Shown piece after piece: positions 3,401 to 55,399 of a DNA stretch of 64,000 nucleotides. The DNA lies in the NCBI RefSeq assembly GCF_021869535.1, contig NW_026262679.1, positions 96,100,001 through 96,164,000 of the forward strand, given 5' to 3'. This DNA is from Mytilus californianus. Taxonomy: Eukaryota. How positions within the stretch are numbered: the first letter of the stretch is position 1; every line of letters begins with the position of its first letter. The position numbers and the translations under genes are program-made. The notes beneath the pieces were generated by a model, which was not told the DNA's origin, searched no databases, and worked only from the letters and a program-made list of their open reading frames with translations.

Positions 3401-3552
3401 CCGATAGTGGCAGCGCAGATAAATGCCCCACTAGCGAGTTATCACATTGTTGACAAACTGAGTCGGTATCTTCCATTTCCTTGAGAACTCAGTAGCGATA
3501 GCTAGGAATGTGCTAATTTCTCGCAGATTTAGGCAGTATCTGTTGTTATTGC

Positions 3553-4010
3553 AAAACATGTCGCTAGTAAGTTGAGACACTGACAAGTCGTATCAGTCAA
3601 CCAGTTTGTGATGCTGACCTTAAAATTTATGCAGTGTCGATGTCAGTCGTTCGTCCTCATAACTCAGTTTATGTGTTAGGAGCACACCCATGTTAATGAG
3701 TTCCGAAAAGTGTGAACATGCACGAGCGTAACTTATTGACTGAGATATGTAAACGCCATATACGATTGAGAAGACGGTATGTTACTTCTGAGAAATTGGA
3801 CGCTGACAAGTGGAAGTTGGAATCATCACGTTTGTCATAGATTAGTTTTGAAGTCATCCATCTGTGTCAATATGGAGGACAAAAATCAAGATATGAAGCA
3901 GACTTTTGGTAGTATCCATAATCTCAAGTTCATTATGATATATGAGATGAAAGCACTCATTGAAATGTGGGTTATTGTTGGACACAACTGCATCAATATA
4001 TCTGAAATTG
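3553..4010 (-). pseudogene. Penelope-like retroelement reverse transcriptase, C-terminal fragment with stops and frameshifts
   Basis: Minus-strand translation across frames gives FRYIDAVVSNNNPHF..LIYHNELEIMDTT..HIDTDG..IYDKRDDSNF..GVYISQSISYARACSHFSE..KF*GQHHKLVD*YDLSVSQLTSDMF. This matches the recalled invertebrate PLE RT pattern FRYIDD..ELEIKDTT..YDKRDDF..YGVYISQLIRYARAC. Confidence 0.8.
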
Positions 4011-9700: not shown

Positions 9701-10077
9701 GCATCACCGAAGAGCTATTAACTGTAGAAATGCGCATCAGGTGCGGTATAGTTGGTAATGTTGATGTAATAACTACCACTGAGTCGATACCTCTGCTGGT
9801 GGACTTTTAATCACTGAGGTAACACCAGTTCAGTAGCCAGTATTTTGGTACTGGCATCAAAACACGGATATTGTTTTATTACAACTTGGAAGTAATTTTA
9901 CATTAAAGAATGTACCCTCCTCAAGCATAGCTCTGATTCCTTGCCCGGATTTGGCTATACTTTGGTTACTTTTGTTTAATCAGATCATCAACTTTTGTAT
10001 AAGATTTTGGATTTTCAAAATATTTGACCTCGAGTATCACTGAAGAGATATAAATTGTCGAAATGCGCATCTGGTGC
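9701..10077 (+). mobile_element. Retrozyme-like unit bounded by two type-I hammerhead motifs (333 nt between predicted cleavage sites)
   Basis: Degenerate hammerhead at 9701-9744 (CCGAAGA..GAAA-TGCGCATC) and intact one at 10034-10077, same orientation. Related sequence occurs on the minus strand near 16160-16300, 17155-17255 and 60170-60240. Confidence 0.7.
10034..10077 (+). ncRNA. Minimal type-I hammerhead ribozyme, core intact
   Basis: GTATCA-CTGAAGA-GAT[ataaatt]GTC-GAAA-T[GCGC]AT-C-TGGTGC. Stem I is 6 bp with G-U pairs; core CUGANGA/GAAA; palindromic GCGC loop III; AUC cleavage triplet after 10071. Confidence 0.85.
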
Positions 10078-13039: not shown

Positions 13040-13720
13040 CGTATTTCTTCCTTTATTTGTCTCCAAATGAATTATGTCCATCTTGTCACCTCGAACATGT
13101 GAGCACTATAAAATTGAGATTGGAAATGGGGAATATGCCAAAGAGACAACAACCCGACCAAAGAGCAGATAACAGCCGAAGGCCACCAATGGGTCTTCAA
13201 CGCAGCGAGAAAATCCCGCACCCGGAGGTGGGCCTCAGCTGGCCCCAAAATAAAAATGTGTACTAGTTCAGTGAAAATGGACGTCGTACTAAACTCCAAA
13301 ACATATAAATGAACTAAAATTAAAAAACATACAAGACTAACAAAGGCTAGAGGCTCCTGACTTGGGACAGGCGCAAAAATGCGGCGGGGTTAAACATGTT
13401 TAGTGAGACCTCAACCCTCCCCTATACATCTAGCCAATGTAGAAAAAACAAACACACTGTAATACGCACAGTAAAACTCAGTTCAAAAGAAGTCCGAGTC
13501 CGATGTCAGAATAGGTAACAAAAGAAACTAAGCAAAATGACAACGATACATAAATTAACAAAGGACTACTAGCAGTTACTGACATGCCAGCTCCAGACCT
13601 CAATTAAACTGATTGAAAGATTATGTCTTCATCATATGAAAATCAAGCACAATCCCTCCCGTTAGGGGTTTAGTATCATACCATCATAAAATATATGAGA
13701 AGAACATAACCCGTGTCATG
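13040..13720 (-). mobile_element. Abundant non-autonomous interspersed repeat (family C) carrying a twister-like motif
   Basis: Reverse-complement homologue of 59290-59790, with a partial copy at ~44660-45000. Confidence 0.75.
13345..13435 (-). ncRNA. Twister-ribozyme-like motif, P5-type permutation (best copy)
   Basis: Minus strand: GGCTAGA-tgtata-GGG-GAGGG-ttgaggtctcactaaacatgtt-TAA-CCCC-GC-C[GCA tttt TGC]G-CCTG-TCCCAAGT-CAGG-agcc-TCTAGCC. It has P5 (7 bp), P2, P3, P4, L4 UCCCAAG and GAGGG, as in the recalled twister consensus. P1 is not Watson-Crick. Confidence 0.7.
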
Positions 13721-15966: not shown

Positions 15967-16066
15967 CTGTCATATTCCTGACTTGGTACAGGCATTTCCT
16001 TATGTAGAAAATGGTGGATTAAACCTGGTTTTATAGCTAGCTAAACCTCTTACTTGTTTGATAGTC
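15967..16066 (-). ncRNA. Twister-like motif, family B
   Basis: Minus strand GAGGT-ttagctagctataaaaccaggtt-TAA-TCC-AC-C[ATTTTCT..AGGAAAT]G-CCTG-TACCAAGT-CAGG-AATATGACAG. The L4 ACC / GGT pair replaces CCC / GGG. Confidence 0.55.
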
Positions 16067-17526
16067 GCATAAAATTCCATTATATTGACAACAATGTGTG
16101 AACAAATCCATCTAACTAAAGATCAATTTTGCCTGAGGGAGTTGAAACCTCAGTTTCTTCATAATTCCCAACTTTATAAACGAACAATTTTAGAAAGGTT
16201 TGTTATAAATGATGTTAGTACCGAAGTACTGACTACTGAGCCGATGAAACCCTCGGGGACTGATAGTCCACCAGCAGCGGTATCGACCCAGTGCTTTAAA
16301 AAAAATAAAAACAGCACTTTATTAATTTTATGCGTTCGAAGCGCTTTTTTTAATTTACGTTCACCAAAAACGCTCAACGCCGAATATTTGATAGCCAATC
16401 ATGTATTAGAACCGAGAGCTATATATATATGTATGACCAAAAAAGCACCTATAAAAGTAATAGACAAATCCATCAACAATCAACTTTGCCGAGGGAGTTG
16501 AAACCTTAATAGAAAAGAAAGGATATGGGGTATCCATCCATCACACAAAATCAGTATATGCACAGCAAAAAAAAAAAAAAAAAATAAAAAAAGGAAAGGC
16601 ACATCTCCTTTATTGTTGTTCATCATCTCAAATCACAGTAAGGCCTTCCACACGGTGCTAAAAACTCTAACCTCACTGCAAGTTTTAGACGACCCCTAGC
16701 ACCGGTTTAAGCGGAATTCTCTGCAAACTGACGATCACGCCACAACTGTGAAATGAAGAACAAAGCCATGTAGTAATATCAATGAAATACATCTGGCAAA
16801 GAATCAAACATTTATTATTCACTTTGTTTAGCAAACTACACATCAGTGTATAATGTTTTTATTTTGAATCAAATATTTATTTATGACATATAAAAGGCTC
16901 CCTAAGATCCTCTTTTTTATATGTCTGGGATAACTTTGTGGTTTGCTTTTAGTCTCACAACATCAAAACGGGCGAAACACAATAAAAACATTTCGGTCTT
17001 GTAAAAATAAAAAAATGTGGTATAATTGCCAATGAAACAACTCTCCATCAAAGACTGAATGACATAGAAGTTAACAACTATAGGTCACCGTACGGCCTTC
17101 AACAATGAGCAAAACCCAAACCGCATAGTCAGTTATAAAAGTTTCTTTAAAATTTCTAACTTTATAAACGAACAATTCTAAAAAGGTTTGTTATAAATGA
17201 TGTCCATACCGAAATAATGACTACTGATCGAGCTGATGATACCCTCGGGGACTAATCTGTTTAATTATTTGTTTAGCAAACTCCACATCAGTGTATAATT
17301 TTTTTACTTTGAATCAAATATTTATCTATGACATATATAAGGCTCCTTAATATCCTCTTTTTGAAGTGTCTGGAATAATTTTGTGGTTTGTTTTTTGTCT
17401 CACACCATAAAAACGGGCGAAAAACAAGAAAAACGCTTCGGTCTAATTCCTTACTTCTTATTAAAACATAAGAAAAATAAATTAAGGAATATGGATAATA
17501 GCATATATCTCTGATCGATTTATCAT

Positions 17527-19712: not shown

Positions 19713-20899
19713 ATCATGATTATTCATATGATCACAAACATCTTCAATTAAAAGAAATTTTCTTTCATGATAAAAAGTGTCCTTACACCCAAAATGTAAT
19801 TGGAAGTTTGACATCGGTTAACAATTTAATGTTTAATCAAATGGATAAATATTATACAGGTGCATTTAAATGTTGTCAAGTTTGCATGTATGGTTGTGAA
19901 AAAATAATTTCTTCCCTGATTTTATCTCACACCGGAATACCATTTTCTATCTGCAATCTTAATTCATGGTATTCAAGTGTATTTTAAGGTATTAAGGTTT
20001 TAACAACATTTTGTGAATTCTAAATTATAAATGCCTAAAGATGCCTAAAAAACTGCAACTTTGACAGATTTTGACATAATTGACAAATTTGTAGTATTGA
20101 TCGTTATAAATTATCACAAGATAAACATATAAATAAATAAAGCAACGATAATACCATACATATACTAGTTTACGTTTAAAATATGTCCGACTTGTTTTTG
20201 ACATTGTTGGTACATATTTACAGCCGAAGAGAGCTCTGAAATTATATAATAACTTAATCATCTACAATTCATCAGACTTAAACACGATTTACTTACATGC
20301 TATTTATAAGTTTGTTTGGAACATGTACATTAATGAATATATTATCATGAATCTAGGATATTTATCAATCATGTTTATTCATATTAAAGACACGACTTAA
20401 CCTATATTTAAAGGTACGGAGTGTTTCGCAGTATTTTAGATTAGATCAGCTTTTGTTTTTGTTATTGTGTTATTATGTAAGGAAATAAGGGAACTTTATC
20501 TTTATTTCTTAAGCATTTCTTATTTAAGTTTTTTTCATTCATTTTCGCATTTAAGTTTCGGTTACATTATTATTGAGAATATGACAATAAACTTTAAGTG
20601 AGACCAAAAATTTTTATAAAGCAAAGACGGGCGCTATTGGTTCTGTTGGTCACAAATTATACTAGACTATTAATACATGCAATAGTAAAAACAAACAAAA
20701 AACTCTTATTCTGACCTACAATGTAGGATTTTGAAAGTGTACTGACTGATATTTTAGTCTTAGATAGCTTTGATCTAGTTTTTATTATCTGCCATTACTC
20801 TCAGATCTGTACTTTATGACTTTTGGTTTTTTGTTAGTTTTTTTGTGTGCTTTGTATCGATCTGATGAGTTAATCCCTATTCAACTGATTTTTATAGTT

Positions 20900-21265
20900 T
20901 CTTCTTATGGTATGCTTTAACACGTACCCCTGTCCAAGGTTAGGGAAGGGTTGGGTGCCAGCAAACATGTTATACTCCGCCACATTCTGTATGTGCCTGT
21001 CCTAAGTCAGGTCCCTGTGATCCGGTAGTTGTCGTTTGTTGCTGTATATTATACTCTTGTGTTTCGTTAATTGTTTTGTACGTAAATTATGTCATTACTT
21101 TTTTTTCGTTTGGAGTGTTTGACATTTGTCATTTCGGGCCTTTTATAGCTTACTATGAGTTTTGCTCATTGTTTAAGGGCATATGGTGACCTAACGTTGA
21201 TACATTCTACGTCGTTTGATCTCTGGTGGAGAGTTGTCTCATTGGCAATCATACCACATCTTATT
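20900..21265 (+). mobile_element. Abundant interspersed repeat family A with degenerate twister-like motif (~20936-21017)
   Basis: Shares GGAGAGTTGTCTCATTGGCAATCATACCACATCTT and GTGCCTGTCC.AAGTCAGG with copies or fragments at ~6715-6990, ~17005-17140, ~18437-18645, ~22720-22800, ~29775-30100 and ~63430-63750. Confidence 0.8.
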
Positions 21266-22299
21266 TTTATACTAGGAGGTTATATGCAAATGTACTTGGT
21301 TCGACTGACAAGCGATACGGCTAATTCTGAAATATTCTACTCCCTCTCATGAATTAAATTGTTTCGGATAAAAGAAATACTCGAATTAAATTGTTTCGGA
21401 TAAAAGTGATACTCTCGACTTCATTGTCAGCTAATAGAAACAGTGAGAGATACATATATCTAAATAAAACAGTGAGAGATACATATATCTAAATGTACAA
21501 ATACATTGGTGACGGTATAAACGTGCGTGTTGTTTTGTTGTACTTACTATTTCAGTGCACTTTCCAGACCCATATTTTCTTAATTGTTTACTATTATAAT
21601 GTAACAAATTACTTACAACACACAAATGTCTAATACATATACTTATATATCGGTCAGCACTGAATAAATGTATCAGCGAACAGAGCTATTTATCAGCTGT
21701 TTAAGTCTAATTTCGAAATACATGTAATAGTTTCTGGTGATACCTTTTTAAAAAACCATTGCGACATACATAGCAAATAATGTGTATAAAACGAATTGTG
21801 TATACAATGAATATTAAGCAAAGGAAATGTGTAATCATAAAGAATCAATTTAGACTGTCAGTGATTTTCCAACAATGTGTATCCGATGCGATCCTATAGC
21901 AATATAGTTCATGCGATCGGTTCTCGAATACCCATACTGATGATTTAATCAATCTGGATTCTGATCTTCAGTGTATCATTTCTACTCCTTTCCGAAAGGC
22001 GTTCCCAAGTTTGTAACTCAGCCTATTAGCCAATTGAATCTTAGCAACTCCATCTGGAAACCAATCAGAACTAACGTGTGTTATGTAAAAATAATAATAA
22101 TTTGAAGATGGTGTGTATATCGTATGAAAGTTTTATAGCTTCGCATCGTTATACGAAGCAATCGGACGAAAGAAAACTGGATTTTATTTTACATTTACTG
22201 TAAAACATCAGACAAACGTAGAAATATTTACGTAAAAATACTGCGGTTAACCAATGAACATATTCATAATGTAAATTAGAAAATGTTTATTCAAAATTT

Positions 22300-23480
22300 A
22301 TTTATTGTCATTAGAAGACTTATGTAAATAATTTACGTTGCATAAAGAACTTATAGAGACTTTTACATTAAAAAGGCTGAATGTTGAAGCAGTTCATATT
22401 TGTAAAAATTTTGAATCATAATTTAAATTCTAAAAAAATATATGTTGAGAACATTCTGAGTAAAGATTGAATCTTAAGTCAACATACAAAGAGCAGTTCA
22501 ATAAAAAATGTTTCTTAAATTCAATACAACTATTAGAACAATATATACAAAGACGGTCGTCAACTGGTATTGGTGGTCTGATGACTCTGCCAGTCTCGAT
22601 GGCTAACGGAAGTGAGCCTGCACGGAACAGGGTCATAACACGTGTGTATGGCCGGTGACTATAATTTGCAAGATATATTCAAAATAATGGTCCATAGGTT
22701 CTCAATATAAAAATAAAGAGATGAGGTATGATTGCCAATGAGACAACTATCCACCAAAGTTAAGATGAAGTGGATGTAAGCAATTATAGGCAAATGTACA
22801 GCCTATTTATTTCCGGTCATCATTTCCTGTCATAATAAAGTTCTCTTTTCTATTCCATATTGTTAAGAAGTTTAACGTTTTCGAATCTTCTTTTCATGAC
22901 TATTTTGGTTCAAATTGTCACATCACTTACAAGTTCATTTTAATTCCAACATGCCGACCGTCTTCCTCATTCAGTGTTCCAGCCTTTTCGCCGACGCGAT
23001 ATCCAACTCTAAATCTTATAGACAGTTCTATTTCCCACAGTCGAATTAGATTACACAAAAGCTGAACGAAAGAAACACTACATGTTGCTTAATTAAAAAC
23101 ATGAAGTCCATCCTAGGTCACGAGGTCACCGACCGTAGAAATTTTTGAAGCATTTTTCCCAACAGACAAAGGGTACTTGTAGCTTTATTTCAAACAGCAT
23201 TGATTCATTATATGATAAAGTCCCCTAAATTTCGCTTCCTAAAATCAAAATAGACTCCATTATAGAATTGTACAGTTTTATGTAAACCTTGTATGACATA
23301 CCACCAGAAGAGATGAATCGTCCGAAAACTGCTTTCAAAGTTCGGCTCACTGATTTAGCAAGTTCTTTAGTGCTTTTCGTAAACGTTAGATGCTTGTCAA
23401 ACCAAATCCTAATGTATTTGTAAGAGTTCGTATTTGTAATATTATAAATACTACGTAAAATAATGGTCTGAAATATCAAA
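22300..23480 (-). pseudogene. CR1/L2-type LINE ORF2 3-prime remnant
   Basis: YKYIRIWFDKHLTF..ELAKSVSR..GGMSYKVYIKLYNSIMESILILGSEI (post-RT region) and RAGSLPLAIETGR..DRLCIYC..HFLLNCSLYVDLR (C-terminal Cys/His motif). Interrupted by a family-A fragment at ~22720-22800. Confidence 0.8.
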
Positions 23481-32282: not shown

Positions 32283-32397
32283 GGGAAATTCGTTGGGAAC
32301 ACAATGACCACCTCGATAAGCGATAGTAAACTCATTTTGGCTAAAAATAGAATAGAATTTCCCCTGTATACATTGTAGGCTAAATGTAGTATATATG
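32283..32397 (+). promoter_or_regulatory. Candidate proximal promoter: two kappaB-like sites and a TATA-like element
   Basis: GGGAAATTCG (32283-32292, +) and GGGAAATTCT (32354-32363, -) are each one base from GGGAAATTCC. TATATATG at 32390-32397 lies ~70 bp before the ATG. Motif match only. Confidence 0.4.
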
Positions 32398-32467
32398 CTA
32401 GTTAAAACATTATTTTTCTCATATTTCAAAACTTATATTAAATAGAAATAAGTTTTTTGAAGATACT

Positions 32468-32537
32468 ATGTACAACAAAATGATGTTTGACACAAAAACG
32501 TCTGCATATTTTATAACGCATTCTCTTTGCACACTAG
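32468..32537 (+). CDS. Cytokine-like gene exon 1 (signal peptide)
   Basis: MYNKMMFDTKTSAYFITHSLCTL plus 1 nt, donor GTATGT. The upstream or the second/third ATG could be the start. Confidence 0.75.
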
Positions 32538-35500
32538 GTATGTCTTTAGATTTTCTGCTAAATGCTTATTGTAAAAAAGGTTTAACATCGTTATTTAAAA
32601 AATATAGTGTCATTACCAAGATTTTTTGTTTTTGATAACAAAATCACTAGGTACATGAACTTTTAAAAAACATTTTGGAATTGTCAACGTTGTTAAAGGG
32701 CTTGTAGTTTAGTCTGCGGGTGAATTTAAATTTAACTTTTTGACTTAATGTTTTTCAGCGAAATATTTGAGTGAAGATTGCACACATGATTGGTTACTAA
32801 CATGATTTTTATTTCTATTTAACAGCAATTCTTACATCGCTGTTTTCGAGGGTAAAGACAACACCAACAGGTGCTGAGCGATGGCGACATCCTTGTGGAA
32901 TATCAAATACTGACACTAGCCATCTTTCTCCAGTACCCACACGACCACTTGTTGAGATTATTACTGGCATGCTAGTACAGATCAGAGAGGGCCAAGAATA
33001 TTCAAGCAACCTACAAGAGAAAATTGTAAATATTTTTCTTACTTTTTTGCATAAAACAGTACTAAATTTCATTTAAAAATGGCGAATAAATGTACATGTA
33101 AAGGTACTTTTTAAATAATAACTGTCATTATTATAAACATCCTTTTCGGACTGTTTTTTTTATATATTTAGTGGGTTGTTGTATAGTGCAGAGAATATTG
33201 TAGATGGGAAGTGATATAAAAACAAATATCTTGCATTTTTACTAGAAAATCATTCTTACCGTCGATATTTTAAATTATTCAAATCCATGTTTAAGAAAAT
33301 TCATAAGCTATCTTATTCATTTTATCAGTAAAGGAACGTTTAAAAATTCATTCATAATATTACTACACGGTCGGTGATTTTCTTTAAAGTTAGTAAACAA
33401 TATGAGAAAAATATGTCACTGCAATTCTCGGAATACGGAAGTAAGTTGTAAGAAACGTGATCTAATGACATATATTTGGATTTTAAATACAATGCATAAC
33501 CCTCTTATCGCACTACAACCACGGACTTCTTGTTACGTTATAAGAAATTTTAATGTCAAAATATTTGAAAAAGGGTAAATTGAAATAATTATCAAATATT
33601 ATCACAGAAAAAAGGGAGAAATGGATTGGGGTTTTGATATTTTAATTTTGTATATCTATATTAATATATTTCCTTATTTTTAAGTGTCATAATTATAAAT
33701 CGATCCTATCTTATTTAAATATACACAATAACTGAATAAGTATTTATACATGATAAAATAAACAATTATTAACTATTTAATTGACGGATGTAATCTTCGT
33801 GAATAAACAAAAGTGTTACAATCCTGCATTCGTTAAATTTCCATTGGTCAGTTGAATTACATCTTCCCGCTTGTGTTCAATATCATCCTCTTTGATTTTA
33901 GGCCATGGAGCGAATACAAAGTATGCGAAATGTGGCATTTCTGAATAGTCTTCATCATGATGGATTTCCAAGTGTCAAAACTTCGACGGAAGAGGATATA
34001 CAAAATTCCTTAATCAATGTAAGTTTACATTATTATTGAAAAGTATATTCAAAATAACAATGTTTAACTTTGAAAATGAATTAGGGAATATCCTTATCTT
34101 TAAAAGCGCCAAATTAAAACGTTTCGATTCAGTTTTGTTGTTGATTAATGTTTGCAGTTTTTAAATGAGTATATATAGCACGTTATTGTTGTCGAAGGGG
34201 AAGTTACATTAAGAGTCAAAGATCAAATTCCAAAAATTACAAAAGAAAACGGAAAATCCTGCACCAGTTATTTATGGTTTCAGATTAATTGAGGAGGCAC
34301 ACCTCTTTCTTAATAGGCAGCCCGTTTACCGGTAGTTATAAATGTTGAATATGCAAAAGTTTGAAAAATTCTCAATTTTCCCAGTATACCATGATGCTCT
34401 CCGTATTAAACATATAGTTTATTACAATAAAAACGAATTTTTCTATCGATTCGTTACCAAATAAGAAAAATAGTACAATTTCGAATATTGCCGCCAAAAC
34501 GTTACCACATAACAAGTGTATATTCAAGTTTTCCTGCGTACTAACTTTACGAGTCCCACTTTAAAAGACAAGATTTCTGTGTTCTCTGAGCTGTCGTCGA
34601 TACTTCTTTTTTAATCCTTCAGAACGAATTGAGAGACATGTAGAAAACAAGATTGTTGATGAATTGGTTTCATACAAATTACTAGCCACTATGGATTATA
34701 TTAGCTCTACTTTAGACCTCTGTAAAAAGTTGTTTTACCAAATAGTGGTTCCCACCTTAAACCAGTCATAAAATGGAGGTCAAAATGACCTTTTCGTTAC
34801 CTATTTTAAAATAACAGTTGGTTCCATATTGATGTATCGTTTTACGATGGTATTTGCATTAAATGAACAAACAATATTTACAACAAGGTATATTCATTCT
34901 ATGATATTTTTAAAGGAGGGTCTGGATAGGGTGTCCTTTATTTCTTTGTTCTTTAATTTTTTAGGCCATTTTTCTCTATTCTTTTTATGTGTTGCCCATT
35001 ATTCTCTATTCTTTATCTTTTAGTACCTCGTTATTCTCGATACCTTTAATTTTTTGGTCTATTTTTCTCTATTCTTTTTATTTTATGCCTATCATTATCT
35101 ATTCTGTAAACCCCAATCCACACCCTCTTATAGCTGCCATTGCTTACAGAATTACTCGGTTACAGGTATTGATAACTTGTTTGTATTTATAAAAACAATC
35201 TTACCATGATAGAATGATTATTTACGTATTTTTTTATTATTATTTCAGGTAACTAAAACTCATTTAGAAAACTACAGAACTTTAGCAATTACTTTAGTCT
35301 TCATTGAAAAAATGAGGTTTGACGAGGAGATATATGAAAACAAAAAATATTCCAATGACATTCTTACTATGGAGTCAAAGCTTTACGACGTTCTCTGCCA
35401 TATGGATGAAGCTTTAAGCACAAAAGGAGACAGTATTGAACACGTGACACGTGAAGTTATGCAAATGGAACTGCGCACACTTTCGTCAAGAATGGACCGT

Positions 35501-35599
35501 TTCATGCGAGATTACATAACAGTGAAAGATACTTCTAAAATCTTGGACCATTTAATTTTCCAATACTCAGCTTTAAATAATAAATACCAAGAAAGCTAA
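32468..35599 (+). CDS. Secreted Unpaired-like / class-I helical cytokine, 4 exons, 245 aa
   Basis: join(32468..32537,32826..33025,33902..34018,35249..35599) = 738 nt with no internal stop. All introns are GT-AG with compatible phases 1,0,0. Hydrophobic N-terminus (AYFITHSLCTLAILTSLFSRVKT-TP), WRHPCG, LYDVLCHM, VTREVMQMELRTL..RFMRDYI. The family call is from recalled motif similarity. Confidence 0.8.
32826..33025 (+). CDS. Cytokine-like gene exon 2
   Basis: Acceptor TTTCTATTTAACAG; (A)ILTSLFSRVKTTPTGAERWRHPCGISNTDTSHLSPVPTRPLVEIITGMLVQIREGQEYSSNLQEKI; donor GTAAAT. Confidence 0.85.
33902..34018 (+). CDS. Cytokine-like gene exon 3
   Basis: Acceptor CTCTTTGATTTTAG; AMERIQSMRNVAFLNSLHHDGFPSVKTSTEEDIQNSLIN; donor GTAAGT. 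Confidence 0.85.
35249..35599 (+). CDS. Cytokine-like gene exon 4 (terminal)
   Basis: Acceptor TTATTATTATTTCAG; VTKTHLENYRTLAITLVFIEKMRFDEE..LYDVLCHMDEAL..RDYITVKDTSKILDHLIFQYSALNNKYQES*. Confidence 0.9.
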   Translation, partial: VTKTHLENYRTLAITLVFIEKMRFDEEIYENKKYSNDILTMESKLYDVLCHMDEALSTKGDSIEHVTREVMQMELRTLSSRMDRFMRDYITVKDTSKILDHLIFQYSALNNKYQES

Positions 35600-42172: not shown

Positions 42173-44023
42173 ATCGAGGCTTGACAAGTTAGATAATAAA
42201 TAAAAAAAATGTTTGTCTTCATATTTGTTTCTCTCTCAACAGTATCATTTTAGTTGATTATATCACTGTTTTGATACGACCGAACTTAATTGGCAAAGCC
42301 TAATCAACGAAAAAAATTCCTAAGTAAAATCATACAATGATTTTAAGCATATTATGTGTGGTAAGGGAGGTAAATCGTGATGGATTTGAATTTGTTTACA
42401 TTCGTTGTGTCTTTCTCTGTTACAAAAACTTAAAATAAAAACCGATTCTAGCTCTTATTTGTATTTGTTACAGTTAAAAAAACATGCGAACCAATGAGCC
42501 GTAAACAGCTTTAAAATTTTCAAAATGAATTTCAGTCGGGTTGAATTAATATGATTTTTCAAAATCCAAATAACCCTAATGAGGGACTAATGATTAGCAA
42601 ATTCTCATCATCTTATTTTTAAAGTAAACTCCCTTAAATAACTAAAATGTTTGCTACAGATTTGCAAAAGACCTGCTGCAGGTTTTCTGCAAACAGAAAA
42701 TTTGCAGAAAACCTTAAAATAATGTTTTCAGATGTCTGCAGCTATAGCTATCAGCAAGATTGCAGAAACAGTTATGTTCGCAATAAGATTGCAATAGGGA
42801 ATATTCGCAACTGGATGACAGAAATCCTTGATCAATCTATATGTGCGCAAGATCATCACAAGAATAACTTAGAATGCTTACTGGTAACATTGGTGCTTGA
42901 TCATATATTGATGGTGTTTAAGTAAATTTTATATATATATAAGAGTTCAAGGAGCCATTTTTTAATCCTTATGGGATATTCAATGTGTAATTTTCATCAT
43001 TTGAAAGTATAAATAACAGATATAAATGAATGGAAACATTTGATTGTATTGAGACTTAAACTTATTAACGTATTCAGTTGTCACCAACTCCCCCCCCCCC
43101 CAAAAAAAAAACCCCAAAAAGGTTTGAAAAAAAACAAACATGTTTTTAATACCTAGTACTCTAATCTGTTTACATTTTGTAACTAATTAGATATCATGTT
43201 TCAATAAGTCATGATAAATTTTGAAATTAAACGAACTTAGCCAGCTGTATTCACAAAATGCTTTTCAGATAAATTCTTTTTTTTTTATCCACATTTGAGC
43301 ACTTCTACAAATACAAACATATTATATCTTAAAAGATATCTATTGATACTAAGATAATTTTGCAAAATATGATGTATTCGAATGATTTTATATATGTGAC
43401 AGGGCTTTTTCAGAATTTGCTGTGTAATTTGAATAAGCTGACGCGTAGACAACATACCATAATATATTGTAATGTGGGTAGATCCTGAATGTTTGAAGTT
43501 GACACCCAGGAAAGAGACTAATTTAACATAAATGTTTGCTGAAGGGCTGCGACACACACTCATTTTCATGATAAATTGTTTCCGGCAAACTTTTGACACC
43601 ATTGCAGCAAAGATGCAGAATTACATGTAGAGTCTATTCAAAATTATTCTTGGGCCTCTATGCAAGCTTGCTGCAAATGCACAAAAAAATGTTTGCTGCA
43701 AATATTTGTAGGAGGCTGATTTTTTTCAGTAAGTGAGCTTTAAGGTAAATGAAAGTGCGAAAGTTTTTTTTTTAATCAGGATAAAGGATAGATATAACTA
43801 TATATAGCCTAATACAGATATTTCTGAACCCTAAGGATTGACTGAGTGTATTGACATAGACAGATGATCAACCAGTGAAATTCTCCCGTCCGCCATATAA
43901 ACCCTTAAACAATTGTCTGTTTGGCTTTGTTGGATGGTTGAATACGCAGATACGTTTGATTGGAATGGGGGCATTTGATTCGATGACTCATTCTTGGTGC
44001 TTGAAGAACGAGATTCATTTGTG

Positions 44024-44231
44024 GTCGAGTATCGAGTTGCGAGTTACGAAAGTCGAGTTGCGAGTTACGAAGGTCGAGGTGCGAGTTATGAAAGTCGAGT
44101 TGCGAGTTACGAAGGTCGAGTTGCGAGTTACGAAGGTCGAGTTGCGAGTTACAAACGTCGAGTTGCGAGTTACGAAGGTCGAGTTGCGAGTTACGAAGGT
44201 CGAGTTGCGAGTTACGAAAGTCAAGTTGCGT
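44024..44231 (+). repeat. 21-bp minisatellite, ~10 copies
   Basis: Unit GTCGAGTTGCGAGTTACGAAG. Confidence 0.95.
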
Positions 44232-45289
44232 GAAAATGGTGAAAACTATTTTAATTTTTTGGTGTTCATTTTTGAATGATGATTGCCTATAGAATTGTAT
44301 ACAGTATTGTTGATTCTTTTTGTTGTTTAAACTTAATCTGAGTCTCGTTTAAAAAAAGCATGAATGGATTGCTTACATAATCACTACGCAAAGTATTTTC
44401 TGAAGAAACAGCCTTTTGAAATACAGCGGATGGCTTGTAGTTTAATTATTATTAAATTTCATAGCTAGCACCGTGATATTAAACGTAAATGGAGATAGCA
44501 ACTAATTTATAGTACATACATGTATATGTAAAAGACACCTTCTGCAGATTTCGTTAAGAGTGGGCTCTTCGGGGCAGTTGCAGAGGCAATATTTGTTAGA
44601 GACCCCAAAATTTATTCTTTGGCAGTGTCACTCAAAATTGTGGACGTTTAAGTTACTAGTATATATGTCTACATTCGCTAGAGGTAAATGGGAAGGCTGA
44701 GCGCTCATAAAACCTGTTTAACCCAGTCGCATGTTTGCGTCTGTCCTTAATCAGGAACCTCTAGCCTTTGTTGGTCTGGTATATTTTTTAATTTTGGTTC
44801 ATCTATATGTTTCGGAGCATAGAATGGCGTCCATTTTCTTGATCTAGTGTACATTGTGTTTCGGGGCCTGCTTGGGGCTGCCTCTGGGTGTGGGATTTCT
44901 CGCTGTGTTGAAGACCCATTGGTGGCCTTGGGTTGACTTGTATATTTTGGTTGGGTTGTTGTCTCTTTGAAACATTCCCCGTTTCTATTCGTTATTCTAT
45001 ACATGTAGCTGTCAAAGATACTTTTGTAAAAAATGCAAAAGACGCAGTTTTGGAATATGTAACTTCTTTCTAAAAAATGGGTTAATCATACCCAAATCAA
45101 TTAAGTTAATCTAGGAATAACATGCTGACAAATATAACTCTTTTTACTTTTTTTTTGACACGAAACTCATTGTGCAGTAGATGGGAAACTGATTACATAA
45201 AGTTTGAATTGTCTGTATAAAACGTCATAAATTTTTATATCAATATGAAAAAGTGCAGTTTTAAAGAGTTGTTAGTTATTTGAAAACAA

Positions 45290-47852: not shown

Positions 47853-47896
47853 ACGTCACTGATGAGTCTTGTAAAGACGAAACGCGCGTCTGGCGT
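47853..47896 (+). ncRNA. Minimal type-I hammerhead ribozyme, core intact
   Basis: ACGTCA-CTGATGA-GTCT[tgtaa]AGAC-GAAA-C[GCGC]GT-C-TGGCGT. Stem I 6 bp, stem II 4 bp, GUC cleavage triplet after 47890. Confidence 0.9.
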
Positions 47897-49733: not shown

Positions 49734-50921
49734 ATGGATAAAGCCGCAAATTTGTCTGCCCAATTGTCTAGGCTTGAGAAAGATCTTCAGGACACCTTGT
49801 CAAGGAGTCGCCATTCACATTCTACACCCATTCCCGGGTTTGCAAGTGACTCAGGGATGATTACTACACAGCGCAATGACCAAACGTCTGTTGACAAAAC
49901 AACCCCGATTCATAGTACCCCAGTTGGTCCACATTATATAGGTATTGGCGCAAGACCAAAGGTCTTCCAAGATGAAGGAGCCTCAAATCAGTTGAAACCT
50001 CATGATATTCAAATTGTTAAGGAAAACCCCGTCAACTTGCCCGATAAGAAGTCAACGGGGAAGGCACCAGGGACAAGCATGAGTAAGCGTAGAGATATTA
50101 AGGTTGCAACGTACGATGGGTCAGGTGATTGGAATGACTACCGTTCATATTTTGAGTCATGTTCCTCTATTAACGGTTGGGATAACCTAGAGACAGGGTT
50201 ATACTTATCGGCTTCCCTAAGGGGTCGGACTCAAGGTGTTCTTGGGGATTTATCAGATGACAAGAAAATTCATTGACCAGTTGTTTCGATCTCTAGAAGA
50301 GAGGTTTGCTCCCCAAATCAGTCAGAGTTATACACGGTAAAATTGAAAGAAAGGAAGCAGAGGGCTTCAGAGTCGCTTCCTGAATTAGGACAAACGATAC
50401 GCCGACTGGTGAATAAAGCGTACCCCACTGCCCCAGGAGATGTTAAGGAAACATTGGCTAAAGAACACTTCTTGGATGCATTGATTAATACCGAAATGCG
50501 TATAAAAATCAAACAATCACGGCCCCCTGACCTTAATTCCGCTATTTGTTTAGCTGTAATGTTAGAAACGTTTTACAAGGCAGAAAAGCAATTTGAAGTA
50601 GGGAAAGCCCATTTAAGAGTTGTAGACAATAATGAACAGGTGGTAAGAGAGTCGGAGTCTCATGATAAGTTGTCAGATAAAATTGAAGGCGTGTTAGCAG
50701 CTCTCAATGATCAATTGGCAAGTATGAGTAAAGAGTTAGATGAATTAAAGAATAAAGCCAACATGCCTGGGCCAGCTGATTGGTCGAAGTTTCTTTGCTT
50801 TAATTGTGGTAAACCCGGCCACATGGCTAGAAATTGTAATGCTCATAGAAATAGGAGGCAGAACAACCAAGGATCACCAGGACCTTCGGTTAGAAGTATG
50901 AACAACCGTAGTGGTAAATGA
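49734..50921 (+). pseudogene. gag: gag (frameshifted near 50276-50343)
   Basis: Capsid-like KVATYDGSGDWNDYRSYFE..NGWD..LYLSASLRG and QRASESLPELGQTIRRLVNKAYP; CCHC knuckle CFNCGKPGHMARNC. Confidence 0.9.
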
Positions 50922-50949
50922 AAACGTAAATCTTTGTACCTCGGCTTAA

Positions 50950-53900
50950 ATACACTTAACAATGAAGCAGGGCTCTATGTAGAGTTATTTATAAATGGAA
51001 TCCCTGCCAAGTTTCTTGTTGATACGGGAGCTACAGTTAGGTAGGTGACGGATACTCTTGAGAAATTTAAGTCCCGTGATAGGCCAAGTGTACGACAGGT
51101 CACTCAAGAAATTACAGTAGCCAATGGAGAGTCTTTAAAAATCATTGGTAATGCACTGTTTTCTGTTAAGTTGGGAAGCTTTCACACGGTCATTGAAGGT
51201 GTTATAGCAGGTTTGTCAGTGGAAGGTATTCTTGGACTAGATTTTCTGCAAACAAACGGTTGTAAAGTTGATTTAGGCAATAGAGTGATAGGAAGGGATA
51301 ATCAACAAATACCTTTGTTACTACAGGGAAAGTTAGGCGTTTATCGGGTGGCAGTTAAAGATAAAATTAGCATAACCCAAGGTCAGAGGTAGTATTTCAG
51401 GGCGAAGTACTGAACTATGATTCAGCTGTTAAGGTTACTGGCATTATTGAACCAAGTGAAGAATTTCTTGATCGAGGAAAGGCTCTTGTAGGGAAATCTG
51501 TTGTCACGTCTGATAAGACAGTTCCTGTTAGGCTGTTGAATATAAGTGACAGTGTCCAAGTACTAGATGTCGGTATTGTGGTCGGAAATCTCAGCGGAGT
51601 TGAAGTTGTTAGTCAGGTAGACAATGATAAGGATTGTACTCTTAGCATTGGAAAAGTTATTAGATAGGTCTAGTGAGAGTCTTGAGCATGGACAAAAGGA
51701 AAAGGTCACAGAGTTGTTATTGAAATTTAAGCACCTTTTTGCAGCTTCGGATTCAGATCTTGGACAAACAAATATTGTGAAGCACAGGATTGACACTGGT
51801 GCTGCAAGGCCAATAAAGCAGCCACCACGGCGCAAACCCAAAAGGTCTTAGGGAGGAAGTAGATCAACATTAACGATATATTGGAAAGAAAAATTATTGA
51901 GCCTTCGGAAGGACCATGGTCCTCTGGGATAGTTTTGGTTAGAAAGAAGGATGGAACCACTAGGTTTTGTGTAGACTAAAGATAGTTAAACGCTTGTACT
52001 ATCAAAGATGCGTATCCTTTGCCCCGAATTGATGATTCGCTGGAACAGTTGTCAGGAAACAAGCGCTTTTCTACTTTGGATTTATGTTTTGGATACTAGC
52101 AGGTAGAAGTAGAGCAATCAGATCGCCCTAAAACGGCCTTTGCCATACGGATGGGTCTTTATCAGTTTCGCCGTATGTCATTTGGTCTGGCAAACGCCCC
52201 TGCCACCTTTGAGCGGCTAATGGAGAATGTTATGGCAGAGCTCCAATGGGACATTTGTCTCAAATATCTGGACGATATCATAGTTTTGGCTAATACTTTT
52301 GATGAAATGATACATAATTTACGCAAGGTTTTTGTGACGTTACAAGGCGCAGGGTTTAAACTCAGTTGCCTTTCTCGGACATGTTGTTTCGGAATCGGGT
52401 GTTGCCACCGAACCCGATAAAATTAAGTGTATAAAAGAATGGCCAGTTCTCCAGATCCTTCTTGGGTTTGTGTGGCTATTATCGCCGGTACATAATAAAT
52501 TTCTCAGATACGGCTAAGTGCCTACACCAAATGACCGAAAAGGGTCGCGAATTTCTATGGACAAATGATAGTCAGGAGGATTTTGAAAAGCTGAAAGGAA
52601 AATAAGTAAGTGCCCCAGTCCTCAGTCATCCTGATTTCTCCCAAACATTTATTCTTGATACGGATGCAAGTATCAGAGCGATAGGTGGTGTTTTATCACA
52701 GGTTATCGATGGTGAGGAACATGTTATTGCATATGGGAGTCGTACCCTTTCAAAAACAGAGCGCCGGTATTGTGTTACTAGGCAGTAACTGCTAGCCCTA
52801 GTCCATTTTGTTCAACATTTTAGGCATTTCTTGTACGGTAGGCGGTTTATTATTAGGACAGATCACAGCTCATTACAATGGCTCATTCGATTCAAAAACC
52901 CAGATGATCAACTAGCCCGTTGGCTGGAAGATATAAGTTCATACGATATGGTTATTAAGCATAGGCCAGGTACGTAACATCGCAATGCTTTGGGTCGACC
53001 CTTGTAAACAGTGTGGCTTTGTCGAGAACTGGGAAGCAGTTGGCTCAGTCAATATGGTAAAATTACAGGGAGGCAATAATGATGATCTTGAGCCAGATAT
53101 ACGACAATTGCAAGAAAAAGACAAGGACTTGCAGACTGTTATAGGATGGTTGACTGCTGACTCAAGACCATCATACTCGCAAACCGGCAAACACAGTTAT
53201 GTTGTTAAGTCCCTTTGGTCCCAGTGGAATGTTTTGAAGGTTCAAGATGGTATATTGTTTATGGAAGACTCGGAAACAAATTTGAAACAAGTTGTCATAC
53301 CAATGAAGGAAAGACGTAAAATTCTTGAGTTTGCTCATGATAATAGGACAGCTGCTCATTTGGGCATTAAGAAAACTTTGGCTAGGACTAAAGAAAAAAA
53401 TTATTGGCCAGGTGTTAGAGGTGACACTTGGAGTTATATTGCTGGTTGTTCAATTTGTAATAAGAGAAAGAAACCAATTACTAAAAGAAAGGCCCCAATG
53501 CAAGTTAAAGAGTCAGATTATCCCATGGAGAGAATTGCTATGGATATCCTTGGGGAACTCCCCGAAAGTGACAAAGGCAATAAATATATATTAGTTATAA
53601 GTGACTATTATACTAAGTGGACAGAGAGTCACCCCATGCCCAACATGGAGGCAACTACAGTTGCAAACATTTTTTATGACTGAAGTTATTTCTAGGTTTG
53701 GGGTACCAACTATTATCCATTCCGATCAAGGTAGTCAATTCGAGAGCCACTTGTTTAAGGAAATGTGGAAGTTGCTTCGAATTCAGATAGAAAAGACCCG
53801 TACGACCCCTTATCACCCAAAATCTGACGGGATGGTAGAACGATTCAATAAAACTCTCGCTACAATGCTTACAGGGTATGTAAATGAATATCACTCCAAT

Positions 53901-54557
53901 TGGGACATATTACTTCCTTGTCATGATGGCCTATAGGTCCTCTCAACATGAGACCACTGGTTACACCCCCAATAGATTAATGTTGGGAAGGGAAGTGTCT
54001 ACACCCCTAGACTCAATATATAAGTTACCATCCCAAGTAAAGGCAATACCTCAGAATCAATTGGCATGGGAATTACAAGAACACATGGAAGAGGCACATC
54101 AGATTGTTCAGAGACATGTCTCTGGACAAATGTTAAGGTCAAAGAAAAACCATGACAAAAATGTCAGTTGGGCTAAATTTGAACCTGGCAACATGGTTAT
54201 TTTCCCCTTAGAACCCCGGGTTTGTCGCCAAAGTTCACTAATCAGTGGCGTGGTCCATATAAGGTGCTTAAGATAAACTCAAGTGTCACATACACCGTCA
54301 ATTGTGGACGTAAGGGAGTGAGTCAAGTCATACATGTAGATAGGATGCGCCCTCGTCCCCAACAATTACTAAGGGGGAAAACCTTGTTGACGAACAAAGT
54401 CCTGAGAAAACAGGCGAGTTAGAATCGGAGATTCATGAAGAAGAAGTTATCATTGACTCTTTTCCTTTATTGGATCTAGATGATCATGAGGATGTAGATA
54501 ATGATAGGCCAAGAAGGTTTAGAAAACTCCATCGTGGATGAGGACTACGAAAGTTAA
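50950..54557 (+). pseudogene. pol: pol (protease, RT, RNase H, integrase) with many stops and frameshifts
   Basis: FLVDTGA (DTG 51021-51029), YLDD (52265-52276), FILDTDAS, TDHSSLQWL, integrase H..HLG..CSIC, MDILG, HSDQGSQFES, GMVERFNKTL, WRGPYKV; stop at 54555-54557. Confidence 0.95.
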
Positions 54558-54642
54558 ATTGTTAAGTTTTGAGTTGTAAATAGACAGTGTAAATATGTAT
54601 TTTTAAATATCAAATATCTGTTTTATAATTGTAGATCTAAAT

Positions 54643-55399
54643 ATGGTAAATACAAAGATAACGCCAGCAAAGTCCTCACATGAGACTTACAGATGTCCTG
54701 TCTGTGGTGATAGGTTTTCCACAGCAAAAGAGTGGGGTGACCATATAGTCAAATGATGTGAGGAGAAGCGGGTGTCCACCTCTTTCATTTGCATTGAACC
54801 GGTGTGTACTTATGCAGCCCTTCTTGAAAGAGATCTCAGAAGGCACAACAAGAGGAAACACCAGAAATCTGCCGTAGCTGTGCCGGAAAGTGATACTGAT
54901 TCTGGTGAAATTCAGTTTAGTCAGAGACCGACTGCGTCATCCTGCATTGATGTCACGTCGGCCACTCCGGATGTAGCATCAAGCCCGGAGATAGCACCAG
55001 TGAGAAAGCCAACCAAGCCTCTGCCAGTGTTTGGCTCGGCCAAGAAGAGGCAGTTGATGGAACGCCTGGCAGATAGTGTGAGACCGGTTAAAGAACCGAG
55101 GACTACTGCCACCGCAATAAGAAGTAATTTAGTAGTGGCTTCCTCTATCACGTCTCCAGTTCTATTTACAAGTCCATTGGCACATACTCACGTAACGTCG
55201 TCGCTAGGAGGTGGCGTCTTTCGTCAGCCGGCTTGTGGTCTGATTGTTCCTGCCAGGAGGACAATTGAAACACAAACCCCCGAGGTCATGAGAATATCTA
55301 AGACATGGTTCTCATCACCATGATAAAAGAACTGTCCGATTATGGTATGAAGATGGTGTAAAGGTAGAAGAGACCACAGAAGAAACTTGGGACGATTGA
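54643..55399 (+). pseudogene. Third ORF of the Gypsy element: tandem zinc fingers plus S/T/P-rich region (~250 aa repaired)
   Basis: ATG 54643; YRCPVCGDRFSTAKEWGDHIVK*C (Cx2Cx12H, stop at 54754); in-frame FICIEPVCTYAALLERDLRRHNKRKH (Cx4Cx12Hx4H). A probable frameshift at ~55321 leads into DKRTVRLWYEDGVKVEETTEETWDD*. An acceptor-like TTTTATAATTGTAG ends at 54634. Confidence 0.7.

What the first reader, a model, noticed from the sequence alone, without database searches (positions are those of the whole stretch)
32468..35599. Intact spliced gene for a probable Unpaired/IL-6-type JAK-STAT ligand in a mollusc-like genome
Seen: four exons join into a 245-aa open frame; only the last exon appears in the ORF track. 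The protein has a signal-peptide-like N-terminus, just two mature Cys (WRHPCG and VLCHM) and amphipathic helical segments. Known (recalled): arthropod Unpaired-family proteins share WxNPCG, a LCE motif and a C-terminal MxxxxR..RxxRD pattern, all mirrored here. Inference: a four-helix-bundle cytokine and candidate ligand for a Domeless/gp130-like receptor; such ligands are poorly characterised in molluscs.
Basis: partly seen in the sequence, partly recalled or inferred. Interest (0 to 1): 0.8.

Follow-up and report, generated by a model that had tools for sequence, protein, structure and literature searches.

The report
Mussel Unpaired/IL-6-type helical cytokine gene
The window holds an intact four-exon mussel gene for a probably secreted four-helix-bundle cytokine that is related to an insect protein family distantly linked to Unpaired and folds like vertebrate IL-11/CNTF/IL-6, giving a concrete candidate for the unknown JAK-STAT ligand of molluscs.

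Summary
Exons 32468-32537, 32826-33025, 33902-34018 and 35249-35599 (+) join through GT..AG introns into a 245-aa frame. The conserved start is more likely the ATG at 32480, giving 241 aa.

Transcript contigs of a close relative show junctions 2 and 3 exactly. Junction 1 was not seen in RNA: three contigs read through its acceptor. It is supported instead by purifying selection on exons 1+2 (dN/dS 0.19-0.32), no indels in 726 nt against about 17 expected, identical 241-aa models in three other Mytilus species, and a phase-1 signal-peptide intron shared with scallop, limpet and sawfly genes.

- A Mytilus-only profile finds 140 cluster representatives in molluscs, a brachiopod, an annelid and arthropods.
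- It matches the arthropod W-x-N-P-C-G / L-C-E / R-D-W family at 98% hhalign probability.
- That arthropod family gives only sub-threshold, colinear hits to Pfam Unpaired. The mussel protein gives none.

Secretion, receptor and STAT activation are inferred.

The parts
32468..32537 (+). Exon 1: start codon and the first part of the signal peptide. The first in-frame ATG is at 32468. The conserved ATGATG at 32480-32485 is the likely true start.
   Evidence: sequence, donor AG|GTATGT; the 32468 ATG is deleted in M. trossulus and 32480 is conserved; orthologue models start MMFDTK.
32538..32825 (+). Intron 1, phase 1, splitting the signal-peptide hydrophobic core. Its removal was not seen in the RNA contigs.
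   Evidence: GT..AG. Contigs X1 rec2, X3 rec17 and X2 rec8 read through the acceptor. A phase-1 intron at the same place occurs in the scallop, limpet and sawfly genes.
32826..33025 (+). Exon 2: end of the signal peptide, the N-terminal tether with W-R-H-P-C-G, and most of helix A.
   Evidence: 87% and 81% aa identity with an open frame in the two M. trossulus copies. dN/dS 0.19-0.32 for exons 1+2. Helix A is residues 61-91 of the model.
32882..32899 (+). Codons for W-R-H-P-C-G, the family's N-terminal signature with the first conserved Cys.
   Evidence: Family conservation: W 48/60, P 58/59, C 54/58. Nearly invariant W-x-N-P-C-G in arthropods.
33026..33901 (+). Intron 2, phase 0.
   Evidence: Joint 33025>33902 (GT..AG, skips 876) in transcript contig X1 rec2. 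Same alignment column and phase in scallop, limpet and sawfly.
33902..34018 (+). Exon 3: end of helix A, the short helix and the A-B crossover loop. Its last codon is the N of the N-V-T sequon.
34019..35248 (+). Intron 3, phase 0. It contains a highly repeated element (about 34874-35224, with a 30-nt tandem array at 34959-35105).
   Evidence: Joint 34018>35249 (GT..AG, skips 1230) in contig X3 rec18. Repeat depth is in the thousands. TRF. Same column and phase in the other species.
35249..35599 (+). Exon 4: helices B, C and D, plus the stop codon (TAA, 35597-35599).
   Evidence: 78% aa identity to M. trossulus LOC134714236. Contigs cover it and continue into the 3' UTR beyond 35800.
35396..35398 (+). 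Cys codon of V-L-C-H-M in helix C, the second conserved Cys and the presumed disulfide partner of the W-R-H-P-C-G cysteine.
   Evidence: C present in 133 of 134 family members. The disulfide itself is inferred, because no model coordinates were available.
35507..35515 (+). Codons for R-D-Y at the start of helix D, the most conserved motif of the family.
   Evidence: R 130/135, D 109/135, Y/F/W 128/135. R and D are invariant in the arthropod alignment.

Best explanation
This is an intact, selectively maintained Mytilus gene. Its product is 97.5% identical to M. coruscus CAC5401457.1. It encodes a protein of about 241 aa, predicted here to be secreted. The protein has a signal peptide split by a phase-1 intron, then an N-terminal segment with W-R-H-P-C-G that is probably disulfide-tethered to the L-C of helix C, then a long-chain up-up-down-down four-helix bundle with one N-glycosylation sequon. 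It belongs to a protostome-wide family found in molluscs, a brachiopod, an annelid and arthropods. The arthropod branch is a large set of 'uncharacterized' proteins that gives the only recurrent, though sub-threshold, Pfam match to Unpaired. The most likely function is a cytokine that is secreted, binds the cytokine-binding module of a gp130/Domeless-type class I receptor, and activates JAK-STAT.

Shown here: gene structure, purifying selection, fold, and homology to the arthropod family.

Inferred: secretion, the disulfide, the receptor and the pathway.
For: Gene:
- Canonical splice sites and an open frame.
- Junctions 2 and 3 appear in transcript contigs.
- 0 indels against about 17-19 expected, and dN/dS 0.37-0.40 against two M. 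trossulus copies.
- The same 241-aa model is annotated in M. coruscus, M. edulis and M. galloprovincialis.

Fold:
- AF2 pLDDT 89.9 and pTM 0.82, with helices 61-91, 116-154, 160-183 and 206-240, long A-B and C-D loops and a short B-C loop.
- All of the first 47 Foldseek rows are long-chain cytokines.
- Language-model features point to the cardiotrophin-2/CNTF/IL-11/IL-6/LIF clusters.

Family:
- The Mytilus-only profile finds 140 cluster representatives, from bivalves, gastropods, Lingula, Owenia, Strigamia, insects, mites and ticks.
- hhalign of the mussel profile against the arthropod profile gives 98%, E 1.6e-13, over 201 columns.
- Introns 2 and 3 fall in the same alignment columns with the same phase in mussel, scallop, limpet and sawfly. 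Intron 1 is phase 1 in the signal region in all four.
- PF15972 Unpaired is the most frequent Pfam match of the arthropod branch (9 of 115, best E 4.7e-5, colinear).

Secretion:
- Hydrophobic core LCTLAILTSLF with Kyte-Doolittle mean 2.24, no other hydrophobic span, and one sequon.
- Homologues carry clear signal peptides just before W-x-x-P-C-G.

Context:
- A 2026 survey finds IL6R-like receptors, JAK and STAT in molluscs but no IL-6-like ligand (PMC13203501).
- A mosquito Upd-like protein activates JAK-STAT through Dome (10.1101/2025.09.21.677592).
Against: - No Pfam family reaches threshold for the mussel protein, and PF15972 gives no hit at all.
- There is no sequence match to any PDB cytokine.
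- The link from the arthropod family to Drosophila Upd is only sub-threshold. No Drosophila Upd sequence could be compared directly.
- The exon 1-exon 2 junction was not seen. Three transcript contigs read through the acceptor, and the NCBI M. trossulus model starts at the exon-3 Met (154 aa, no signal peptide).
- The one RNA run of the window's own species label showed no reads on the exons, with about 6% of the run read.
- The signal peptide was judged by a heuristic only. No receptor-binding test was possible.
- The structure was modelled on P0006 (235 of 241 residues identical), not on the exact window product.
Confidence: 0.72

Rival explanations
1. It is a secreted long-chain helical hormone or neurotrophic factor of the same fold class, but not a functional counterpart of Unpaired. 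It could be a prolactin/GH-, leptin- or CNTF-like factor that acts through another receptor or pathway, with growth, metabolic or neural roles.
Confidence: 0.15
2. The real product is a shorter intracellular helical protein translated from an internal Met (exon 3, as in the 154-aa NCBI model of M. trossulus). In this reading exons 1-2 are untranslated leader, and the cytokine-like fold is a coincidence of helical bundles.
For: The NCBI model LOC134714236 starts at MERIQ. Transcript contigs read through the exon-2 acceptor and stop at 32714/5 in two runs, and no exon1-exon2 joint is listed. The only Pfam hits are sub-threshold coiled-coil families.
Against: Exons 1+2 are the most constrained part of the gene (dN/dS 0.19-0.32, no indels). 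W-x-x-P-C-G lies upstream of any internal Met and is conserved from molluscs to arthropods. Homologues have signal peptides directly before it. The read-through contigs contain three short upstream ORFs and in-frame stops, as expected of unspliced RNA. Helix A of the bundle is encoded by exon 2. Cytokine matches lie 9 Z units above other bundles.
Confidence: 0.06
3. It is a decaying or silent duplicate of a multigene family, intact by chance in this genome and without present function.
For: The family is tandemly duplicated: two copies in M. trossulus L001, adjacent accessions on one contig in M. coruscus, and three tandem genes of matching length, two of them family members, in Lottia L004. 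No reads fell on the exons in the RNA run of the same species label. Exon 3 has dN/dS of 0.7-0.9.
Against: There is no stop, frameshift or lost splice site. Overall dN/dS is 0.37-0.40, and 0 indels were found against about 17-19 expected. Spliced transcripts exist in runs of a close relative, from several studies.
Confidence: 0.03

Closest known systems
Arthropod W-x-N-P-C-G / L-C-E-L-Q / R-D-W-I-I-F-R-D family, all 'uncharacterized' (for example Neodiprion LOC124221492, Nasonia LOC100678690, Strigamia T1IIR0, tick and mite members)
   Same: Significant profile-profile homology over 201 columns (98%, E 1.6e-13). Same length class, same two conserved Cys and the same R-D-aromatic motif at helix D. 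Same three intron positions and phases. The predicted structure of its Atlas cluster superposes on the mussel model (TM 0.76).
   Different: Only about 18% identity. The mussel protein has W-R-H-P-C-G and L-C-H-M in place of W-V-N-P-C-G and L-C-E-L-Q. It has a shorter A-B loop, and it lacks the extra intron before L-C-E found in the sawfly gene.
Drosophila Unpaired ligands Upd1/2/3 (Pfam PF15972), ligands of Domeless. Upd3 has been proposed as an ancestral four-helix-bundle cytokine (Oldefest et al. 2013, title seen in the reference lists found).
   Same: Both are expected to be secreted glycoproteins with a four-helix cytokine fold. The arthropod relatives of the mussel protein give recurrent, colinear, sub-threshold matches to PF15972 that begin at the W-x-N-P-C-G position.
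   Different: The mussel protein has no PF15972 match even at E 10. The Pfam model is 273 positions long. By my recollection, not checked here, Drosophila Upds are about 400 aa with long disordered regions. No Drosophila sequence was available for a direct comparison. Function is shown for Upd and untested here.
Vertebrate gp130-family cytokines: IL-11, CNTF, CLCF1, LIF, OSM, IL-6 and IL-27p28
   Different: Sequence identity is 8-13%, and neither HMMER nor Pfam gives a match. The Cys pattern differs from that of IL-6. Receptor-site residues could not be compared. Common ancestry with the vertebrate families is plausible but not shown.
Prolactin / placental lactogen / growth hormone (Pfam Hormone_1)

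Membership tests
Pfam PF15972 Unpaired | The protein scores at or above the gathering threshold (27 bits) against the family HMM. | tested here: not met
   P0006 (97.5% identical to the window product), P0005 and the separate exons give no PF15972 hit at E up to 10.
Pfam PF15972 Unpaired | Remote homology through intermediate sequences. | tested here: inconclusive
   The step from mussel to the arthropod family is solid. The step from the arthropod family to PF15972 is only sub-threshold: 9 of 115 members at E up to 0.1, best 4.7e-5 (score not returned; the two shown in detail scored 15.4 and 19.4 bits), always colinear. A profile-profile test against the Pfam HMM could not be run.
Pfam PF15972 Unpaired | Activates JAK-STAT through Domeless. 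| not testable with these tools
   No experiment and no co-folding tool was available. The analogy rests on fly Upd and mosquito Upd-like.
Long-chain class I helical cytokines (IL-6/gp130 type) | Four long helices in up-up-down-down order, with long A-B and C-D crossover loops and a short B-C loop. | tested here: met
Long-chain class I helical cytokines (IL-6/gp130 type) | N-terminal signal peptide, so that the protein is secreted. | tested here: inconclusive
   The hydrophobic core has a Kyte-Doolittle mean of 2.24 over 11 residues, several -3/-1 cleavage candidates lie at 31-40, and there is no other hydrophobic span. Homologues have clear signal peptides. SignalP was not available, and junction 1, which builds this peptide, was not seen in RNA.
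Long-chain class I helical cytokines (IL-6/gp130 type) | Sequence membership of a vertebrate family HMM (IL6, IL11, CNTF, LIF_OSM, GCSF, Hormone_1). | tested here: not met
   The mussel protein has no such hit. Only 3 of 136 family members touch IL11 below threshold (best E 2.7e-5).
Long-chain class I helical cytokines (IL-6/gp130 type) | Binds the cytokine-binding module of a class I receptor through sites I, II and III. | not testable with these tools
   No multimer prediction or binding assay was available.
Protostome W-x-x-P-C-G ... L-C ... R-D-Y family (unnamed; defined here by the hits) | N-terminal W-x-x-P-C, an invariant Cys in helix C, R-D-aromatic at the start of helix D, and a length of about 200-280 aa. 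| tested here: met
   All are present in the window product. Family frequencies: P 58/59, C 54/58, C 133/134, R 130/135, D 109/135.
Protostome W-x-x-P-C-G ... L-C ... R-D-Y family (unnamed; defined here by the hits) | Shared gene structure: a phase-1 intron in the signal peptide, then phase-0 introns after helix A and before helix B. | tested here: met
   Identical alignment columns (119 and 167) and phases in the window gene, scallop (L002), limpet (L004) and sawfly (L003).

The most novel reading that the evidence does not exclude
The gene belongs to a single ancient bilaterian cytokine lineage. In this reading, mollusc, brachiopod, annelid and arthropod W-x-x-P-C-G proteins, Drosophila Unpaired and the vertebrate gp130-family cytokines all descend from one ancestral gene. 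That gene already had the N-terminus-to-helix-C disulfide of LIF/OSM and the three-intron structure. The mussel protein would then be the missing endogenous ligand of the molluscan IL6R/gp130-like receptor, which closes the 'receptor-JAK-STAT without ligand' gap described for molluscs.
Probability: 0.45. Interest if true: 0.8.

Novelty: new member of a known kind. Interest (0 to 1): 0.66.

Why it matters
Molluscs have class I cytokine receptors, JAK and STAT. A 2026 survey across 18 metazoan phyla and subphyla found no IL-6-like ligand in them and suggested that 'alternative ligands' might exist (PMC13203501).

This gene and its paralogues are concrete, testable candidates for that ligand in a commercially and ecologically important bivalve. 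The family found with it also covers bees, ants, ticks and mites. From memory, not from a paper read here, Upd-type ligands have also been hard to find in those groups.

The conserved intron positions and the IL-11/CNTF-like fold give a handle on whether gp130-type cytokines predate the split between protostomes and deuterostomes.

On the practical side, the NCBI model of the M. trossulus orthologue appears to lack its signal peptide and helix A.

Tried and rejected
- **Pfam on the separate exons and on full-length orthologues.** Only sub-threshold coiled-coil hits (GOLGA2L5, CC_CDK5RAP2), rejected as helical noise.
- **HMMER profiles A2, A4 and A5 against PDB sequences.** Nothing relevant.
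- **RNA raw reads of the window's own species label (X21).** Zero depth on the exons and reads only on the intron-3 repeat. With about 6% of the run read this is not informative.
- **An alternative acceptor at AG 32711-12,** to explain contigs that start at 32714/5. Joined to exon 1 it gives a stop after three codons, and it does not fit the contig starts, so it was rejected. A heterozygous site, or unspliced RNA, is more likely.
- **Linking the arthropod family by gene ID to the published Nasonia 'unpaired-like' and honey-bee 'Unpaired-like A'.** The papers at hand give no accession numbers.
- **Literature searches for mollusc Upd/IL-6-like ligands.** None found. Subscription journals are not covered.
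- **The look-up of encoding contigs for the sawfly isoform P0144.** It failed because only the longest isoform is on record. P0146 worked.
- **A second paralogue in the window.** None found.
- The exact spliced 245-aa protein was not sent to any tool, because it has no reference. P0006 (235 of 241 residues identical) and the separate exons were used instead. A consensus of the arthropod family was not scanned against Pfam for the same reason.
Full report
**1. The observation**

The window is AT-rich (33% GC). At the stated coordinates, four segments join into 738 nt with one open frame of 245 codons ending in TAA: 32468-32537, 32826-33025, 33902-34018 and 35249-35599, all on the + strand. Every intron begins GT and ends AG behind a pyrimidine-rich tract.

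The product has Cys at 21, 47 (W-R-H-P-C-G) and 179 (V-L-C-H-M), and one N-x-T sequon (N129-V-T) that spans the exon 3/4 junction. Beyond the N-terminus there is no hydrophobic span.

**2. Is it a real gene?**

A word search with exon 4 found M. trossulus LOC134714236 (154 aa, 78% identical). A search with that protein found 241-aa models in M. edulis and M. coruscus. The M. coruscus model, CAC5401457.1, is identical to the window product at 235 of 241 positions. An equivalent model exists in M. galloprovincialis. All of these start MMFDTK, which corresponds to the ATG at 32480.

The M. trossulus locus (L001) carries two tandem copies. It aligns to the window at about 81% nucleotide identity through exons and introns alike. 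There the 32468 ATG is deleted while ATGATG at 32480 is kept, so 241 aa is the more likely length.

| Measure (window against M. trossulus) | Result |
|---|---|
| Exon nucleotide identity | 82-91% |
| Intron 1 and 2 identity | 83-87% |
| Indel events in 726 coding nt | 0 |
| Indel events in about 2,000 flanking/intronic nt | 47-51 (17-19 expected in the exons; P about 1e-8) |
| dN/dS, whole gene | 0.37-0.40 |
| dN/dS, exons 1+2 | 0.19-0.32 |

The exons are barely more conserved than the introns in sequence, but they contain no indels. Both M. trossulus copies keep the whole four-exon frame. The NCBI 154-aa model, which starts at the exon-3 Met, is therefore most likely truncated.

**3. Transcripts**

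Seventeen runs of a closely related organism label hold 7-17% of the region's sampled 31-letter words, close to the 22% of the region that is exon. Three of these runs were laid on the region, together with one raw-read RNA run of the window's own species label.

- A 691-nt contig (X1) joins 33025 to 33902.
- A 481-nt contig (X3) joins 34018 to 35249.
- Both joints are GT..AG and match the predicted sites exactly.

Junction 1 was not observed. Contigs from X1 and X3 run from exon 2 back through the acceptor to 32714/5, and the X2 contig runs back to about 32770. Separate low-depth contigs cover 32300-32521, and nothing covers 32522-32713.

The read-through stretch holds three short ORFs and in-frame stops, and the X1 contig also retains the start of intron 3. 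I therefore read these contigs as incompletely spliced RNA, not as an alternative mRNA, but this is an inference. The same-species RNA run gave no reads on the exons, with about 6% of the run sampled.

**4. Fold**

Pfam finds no family for the exons or for the full-length orthologues. A Mytilus profile finds nothing in PDB sequences. Protein-language-model features of exon 4 alone point to cardiotrophin-2-like, CNTF, IL-11, IL-6 and LIF clusters (score 0.93). The full-length protein gives the same picture.

An AlphaFold2 model of P0006, built with a 136-sequence family alignment, has mean pLDDT 89.9 and pTM 0.82. Its helices are A 61-91, B 116-154, C 160-183 and D 206-240. The A-B loop is long (24 residues, with a short helix), the B-C loop is short (5 residues) and the C-D loop is long (22 residues). 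This is the up-up-down-down long-chain cytokine topology.

|---|---|
| IL-11 (rmsd 2.5 A, 168 of 169 residues) | 18.4 |
| CNTF | 18.2 |
| Prolactin | 17.2 |
| CLCF1 | 16.9 |
| IL-27p28 | 16.7 |
| LIF, OSM, IL-6 | about 16.1 |
| G-CSF | 15.5 |

**5. Family**

The Mytilus-only profile (A2) was searched against 1.84 billion cluster representatives. It found 140 proteins at E of 1e-3 or better, many of them full length at 200-285 aa. Look-ups place them as follows:

- Bivalves: Mytilus paralogues, Ylistrum, Tegillarca, Saccostrea, Ostrea, Mya, Potamilus.
- Gastropods: Lottia, Elysia, Gigantopelta, Haliotis, Pomacea.
- A brachiopod (Lingula) and an annelid (Owenia).
- Arthropods: Strigamia, Hemiptera, Hymenoptera, a beetle, mites and ticks.

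All are 'uncharacterized', except that UniRef labels the Lottia and Elysia proteins 'Ciliary neurotrophic factor'.

| Position (P0006 numbering) | Conservation across the family |
|---|---|
| W39 | 48/60 |
| P42 | 58/59 |
| C43 | 54/58 |
| C175 | 133/134 |
| R212 | 130/135 |
| D213 | 109/135 |

In 115 arthropod members, W-x-N-P-C-G, L-C-E, M..R and R-D-W are invariant or nearly so. Profile-profile comparison of the mussel alignment with the arthropod alignment gives 98% probability and E 1.6e-13 over 201 columns, running from W-x-x-P-C-G to the C-terminus.

Gene structure gives independent support. In the window gene, scallop (L002), limpet (L004) and sawfly (L003), intron 1 is phase 1 inside the signal region. 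Introns 2 and 3 are phase 0 at identical alignment columns. The sawfly gene has one extra intron.

**6. Is it 'Unpaired'?**

Pfam has a family Unpaired (PF15972). The mussel protein does not match it. Among the arthropod relatives it is the most frequent Pfam match: 9 of 115 at E up to 0.1, best 4.7e-5. It also appears in 3 of 136 members of the mixed alignment. It always scores below the 27-bit threshold and is always colinear, with protein residues about 20-180 against profile positions about 20-170 of 273, starting at W-x-N-P-C-G.

Twelve hits to one family out of 24,736 cannot be scattered noise, although shared helical composition could contribute. I rate the link as probable but not proven. 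No Drosophila Upd sequence was available for a direct test.

Published context:
- Upd3 has been proposed as an ancestral four-helix-bundle cytokine (title seen in the reference lists found).
- A mosquito 'Upd-like' protein with low identity to the fly Upds activates JAK-STAT through Dome.
- Nasonia and honey-bee 'unpaired-like' genes are in use, but the papers at hand give no accession numbers.

**7. Mechanism**

Shown here:
- an intact, constrained, spliced gene;
- a long-chain cytokine fold;
- homology to a protostome-wide family that includes the arthropod branch linked to Unpaired.

Inferred:
- The N-terminus acts as a signal peptide. Its core, LCTLAILTSLF, has a Kyte-Doolittle mean of 2.24, with cleavage somewhere between residues 31 and 40 of the 245-aa form.
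- C47 and C179 (245-aa numbering) form a disulfide that ties the N-terminal segment to helix C. From memory this is as in LIF and OSM, and the structural alignments to LIF and OSM do extend into this segment.
- The protein binds a gp130/Domeless-type receptor and activates JAK-STAT.

A 2026 survey reports IL6R-like receptors, JAK and STAT in molluscs 'in the absence of a canonical IL6 ligand' (PMC13203501). The proposed role therefore fills a stated gap.

The fold cannot exclude a prolactin- or CNTF-like hormonal role through another receptor. That is the main rival.

**8. Novelty and verdict**

The gene model already sits in public annotation as an unnamed product, and automatic pipelines have hinted at a cytokine fold for two homologues. 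In the searchable literature I found no description of a molluscan Unpaired/IL-6-type ligand. I class it as a new member of a known kind.

- Real gene: about 0.95.
- Long-chain helical cytokine: about 0.85.
- Unpaired-type JAK-STAT ligand: about 0.6.

**Limits**

- The exact spliced product could not be passed to the tools, so P0006 and the single exons stood in for it.
- SignalP, multimer co-folding and a profile-profile search against the Pfam HMMs were not available.

Noticed in passing
window 47853-47896 (+): Type I hammerhead ribozyme. Rfam RF00163, 35.7 bits (gathering threshold 34), E 2.9e-5, full model length. It lies just upstream of the gypsy-like element.
   Followed up: no
window 49734-55323 (+): Degenerate Ty3/gypsy-like retrotransposon. 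It has a gag ORF with a CCHC knuckle, protease-like and integrase-like ORFs broken into several frames, and a further 183-aa ORF at 54772-55323. Other notes of this scan already cover it.
   Followed up: no
window 34874-35224 (intron 3 of the gene): Highly repeated element with a 30-nt tandem array at 34959-35105. Summed contig depth reaches hundreds to thousands in the three contig runs, and the raw-read RNA run has about 70 reads deep here and none on the exons. Many rearranged joints were seen. This stretch aligns only in part to the M. trossulus introns.
   Followed up: partly
window 44032-44230 (+), inside ORF 43875-44279: A 21-nt tandem repeat, 9.5 copies at 92% matches, that reads as (ELRVTKV)n in a 134-aa ORF. 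It is probably a minisatellite rather than a gene.
   Followed up: no
L001 10001-11131 and 17414-18515 (M. trossulus): Two tandem copies of the gene (dS 0.047 between them). Both are annotated as 154 aa starting at the exon-3 Met, although conserved exons 1 and 2 lie intact upstream at about 8575-9137 and 16012-16556. The N-terminus is probably under-annotated.
   Followed up: yes
L004 (Lottia gigantea): 1-3731, 10001-13450, 20526-23450: Three tandem genes of 224-239 aa. At least two belong to this family (LOTGIDRAFT_174017 and 174018). In M. coruscus the paralogue P0007 has the neighbouring accession number and lies on the same contig as the orthologue P0006. Tandem expansion seems typical of the family.
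   Followed up: partly
Proteins P0273, P0275, P0278 and P0125 (ticks and a spider mite): The arthropod branch includes ticks (Ornithodoros, Rhipicephalus, Amblyomma) and Tetranychus. These would be candidate endogenous Dome ligands in chelicerates. Not examined further.
   Followed up: no
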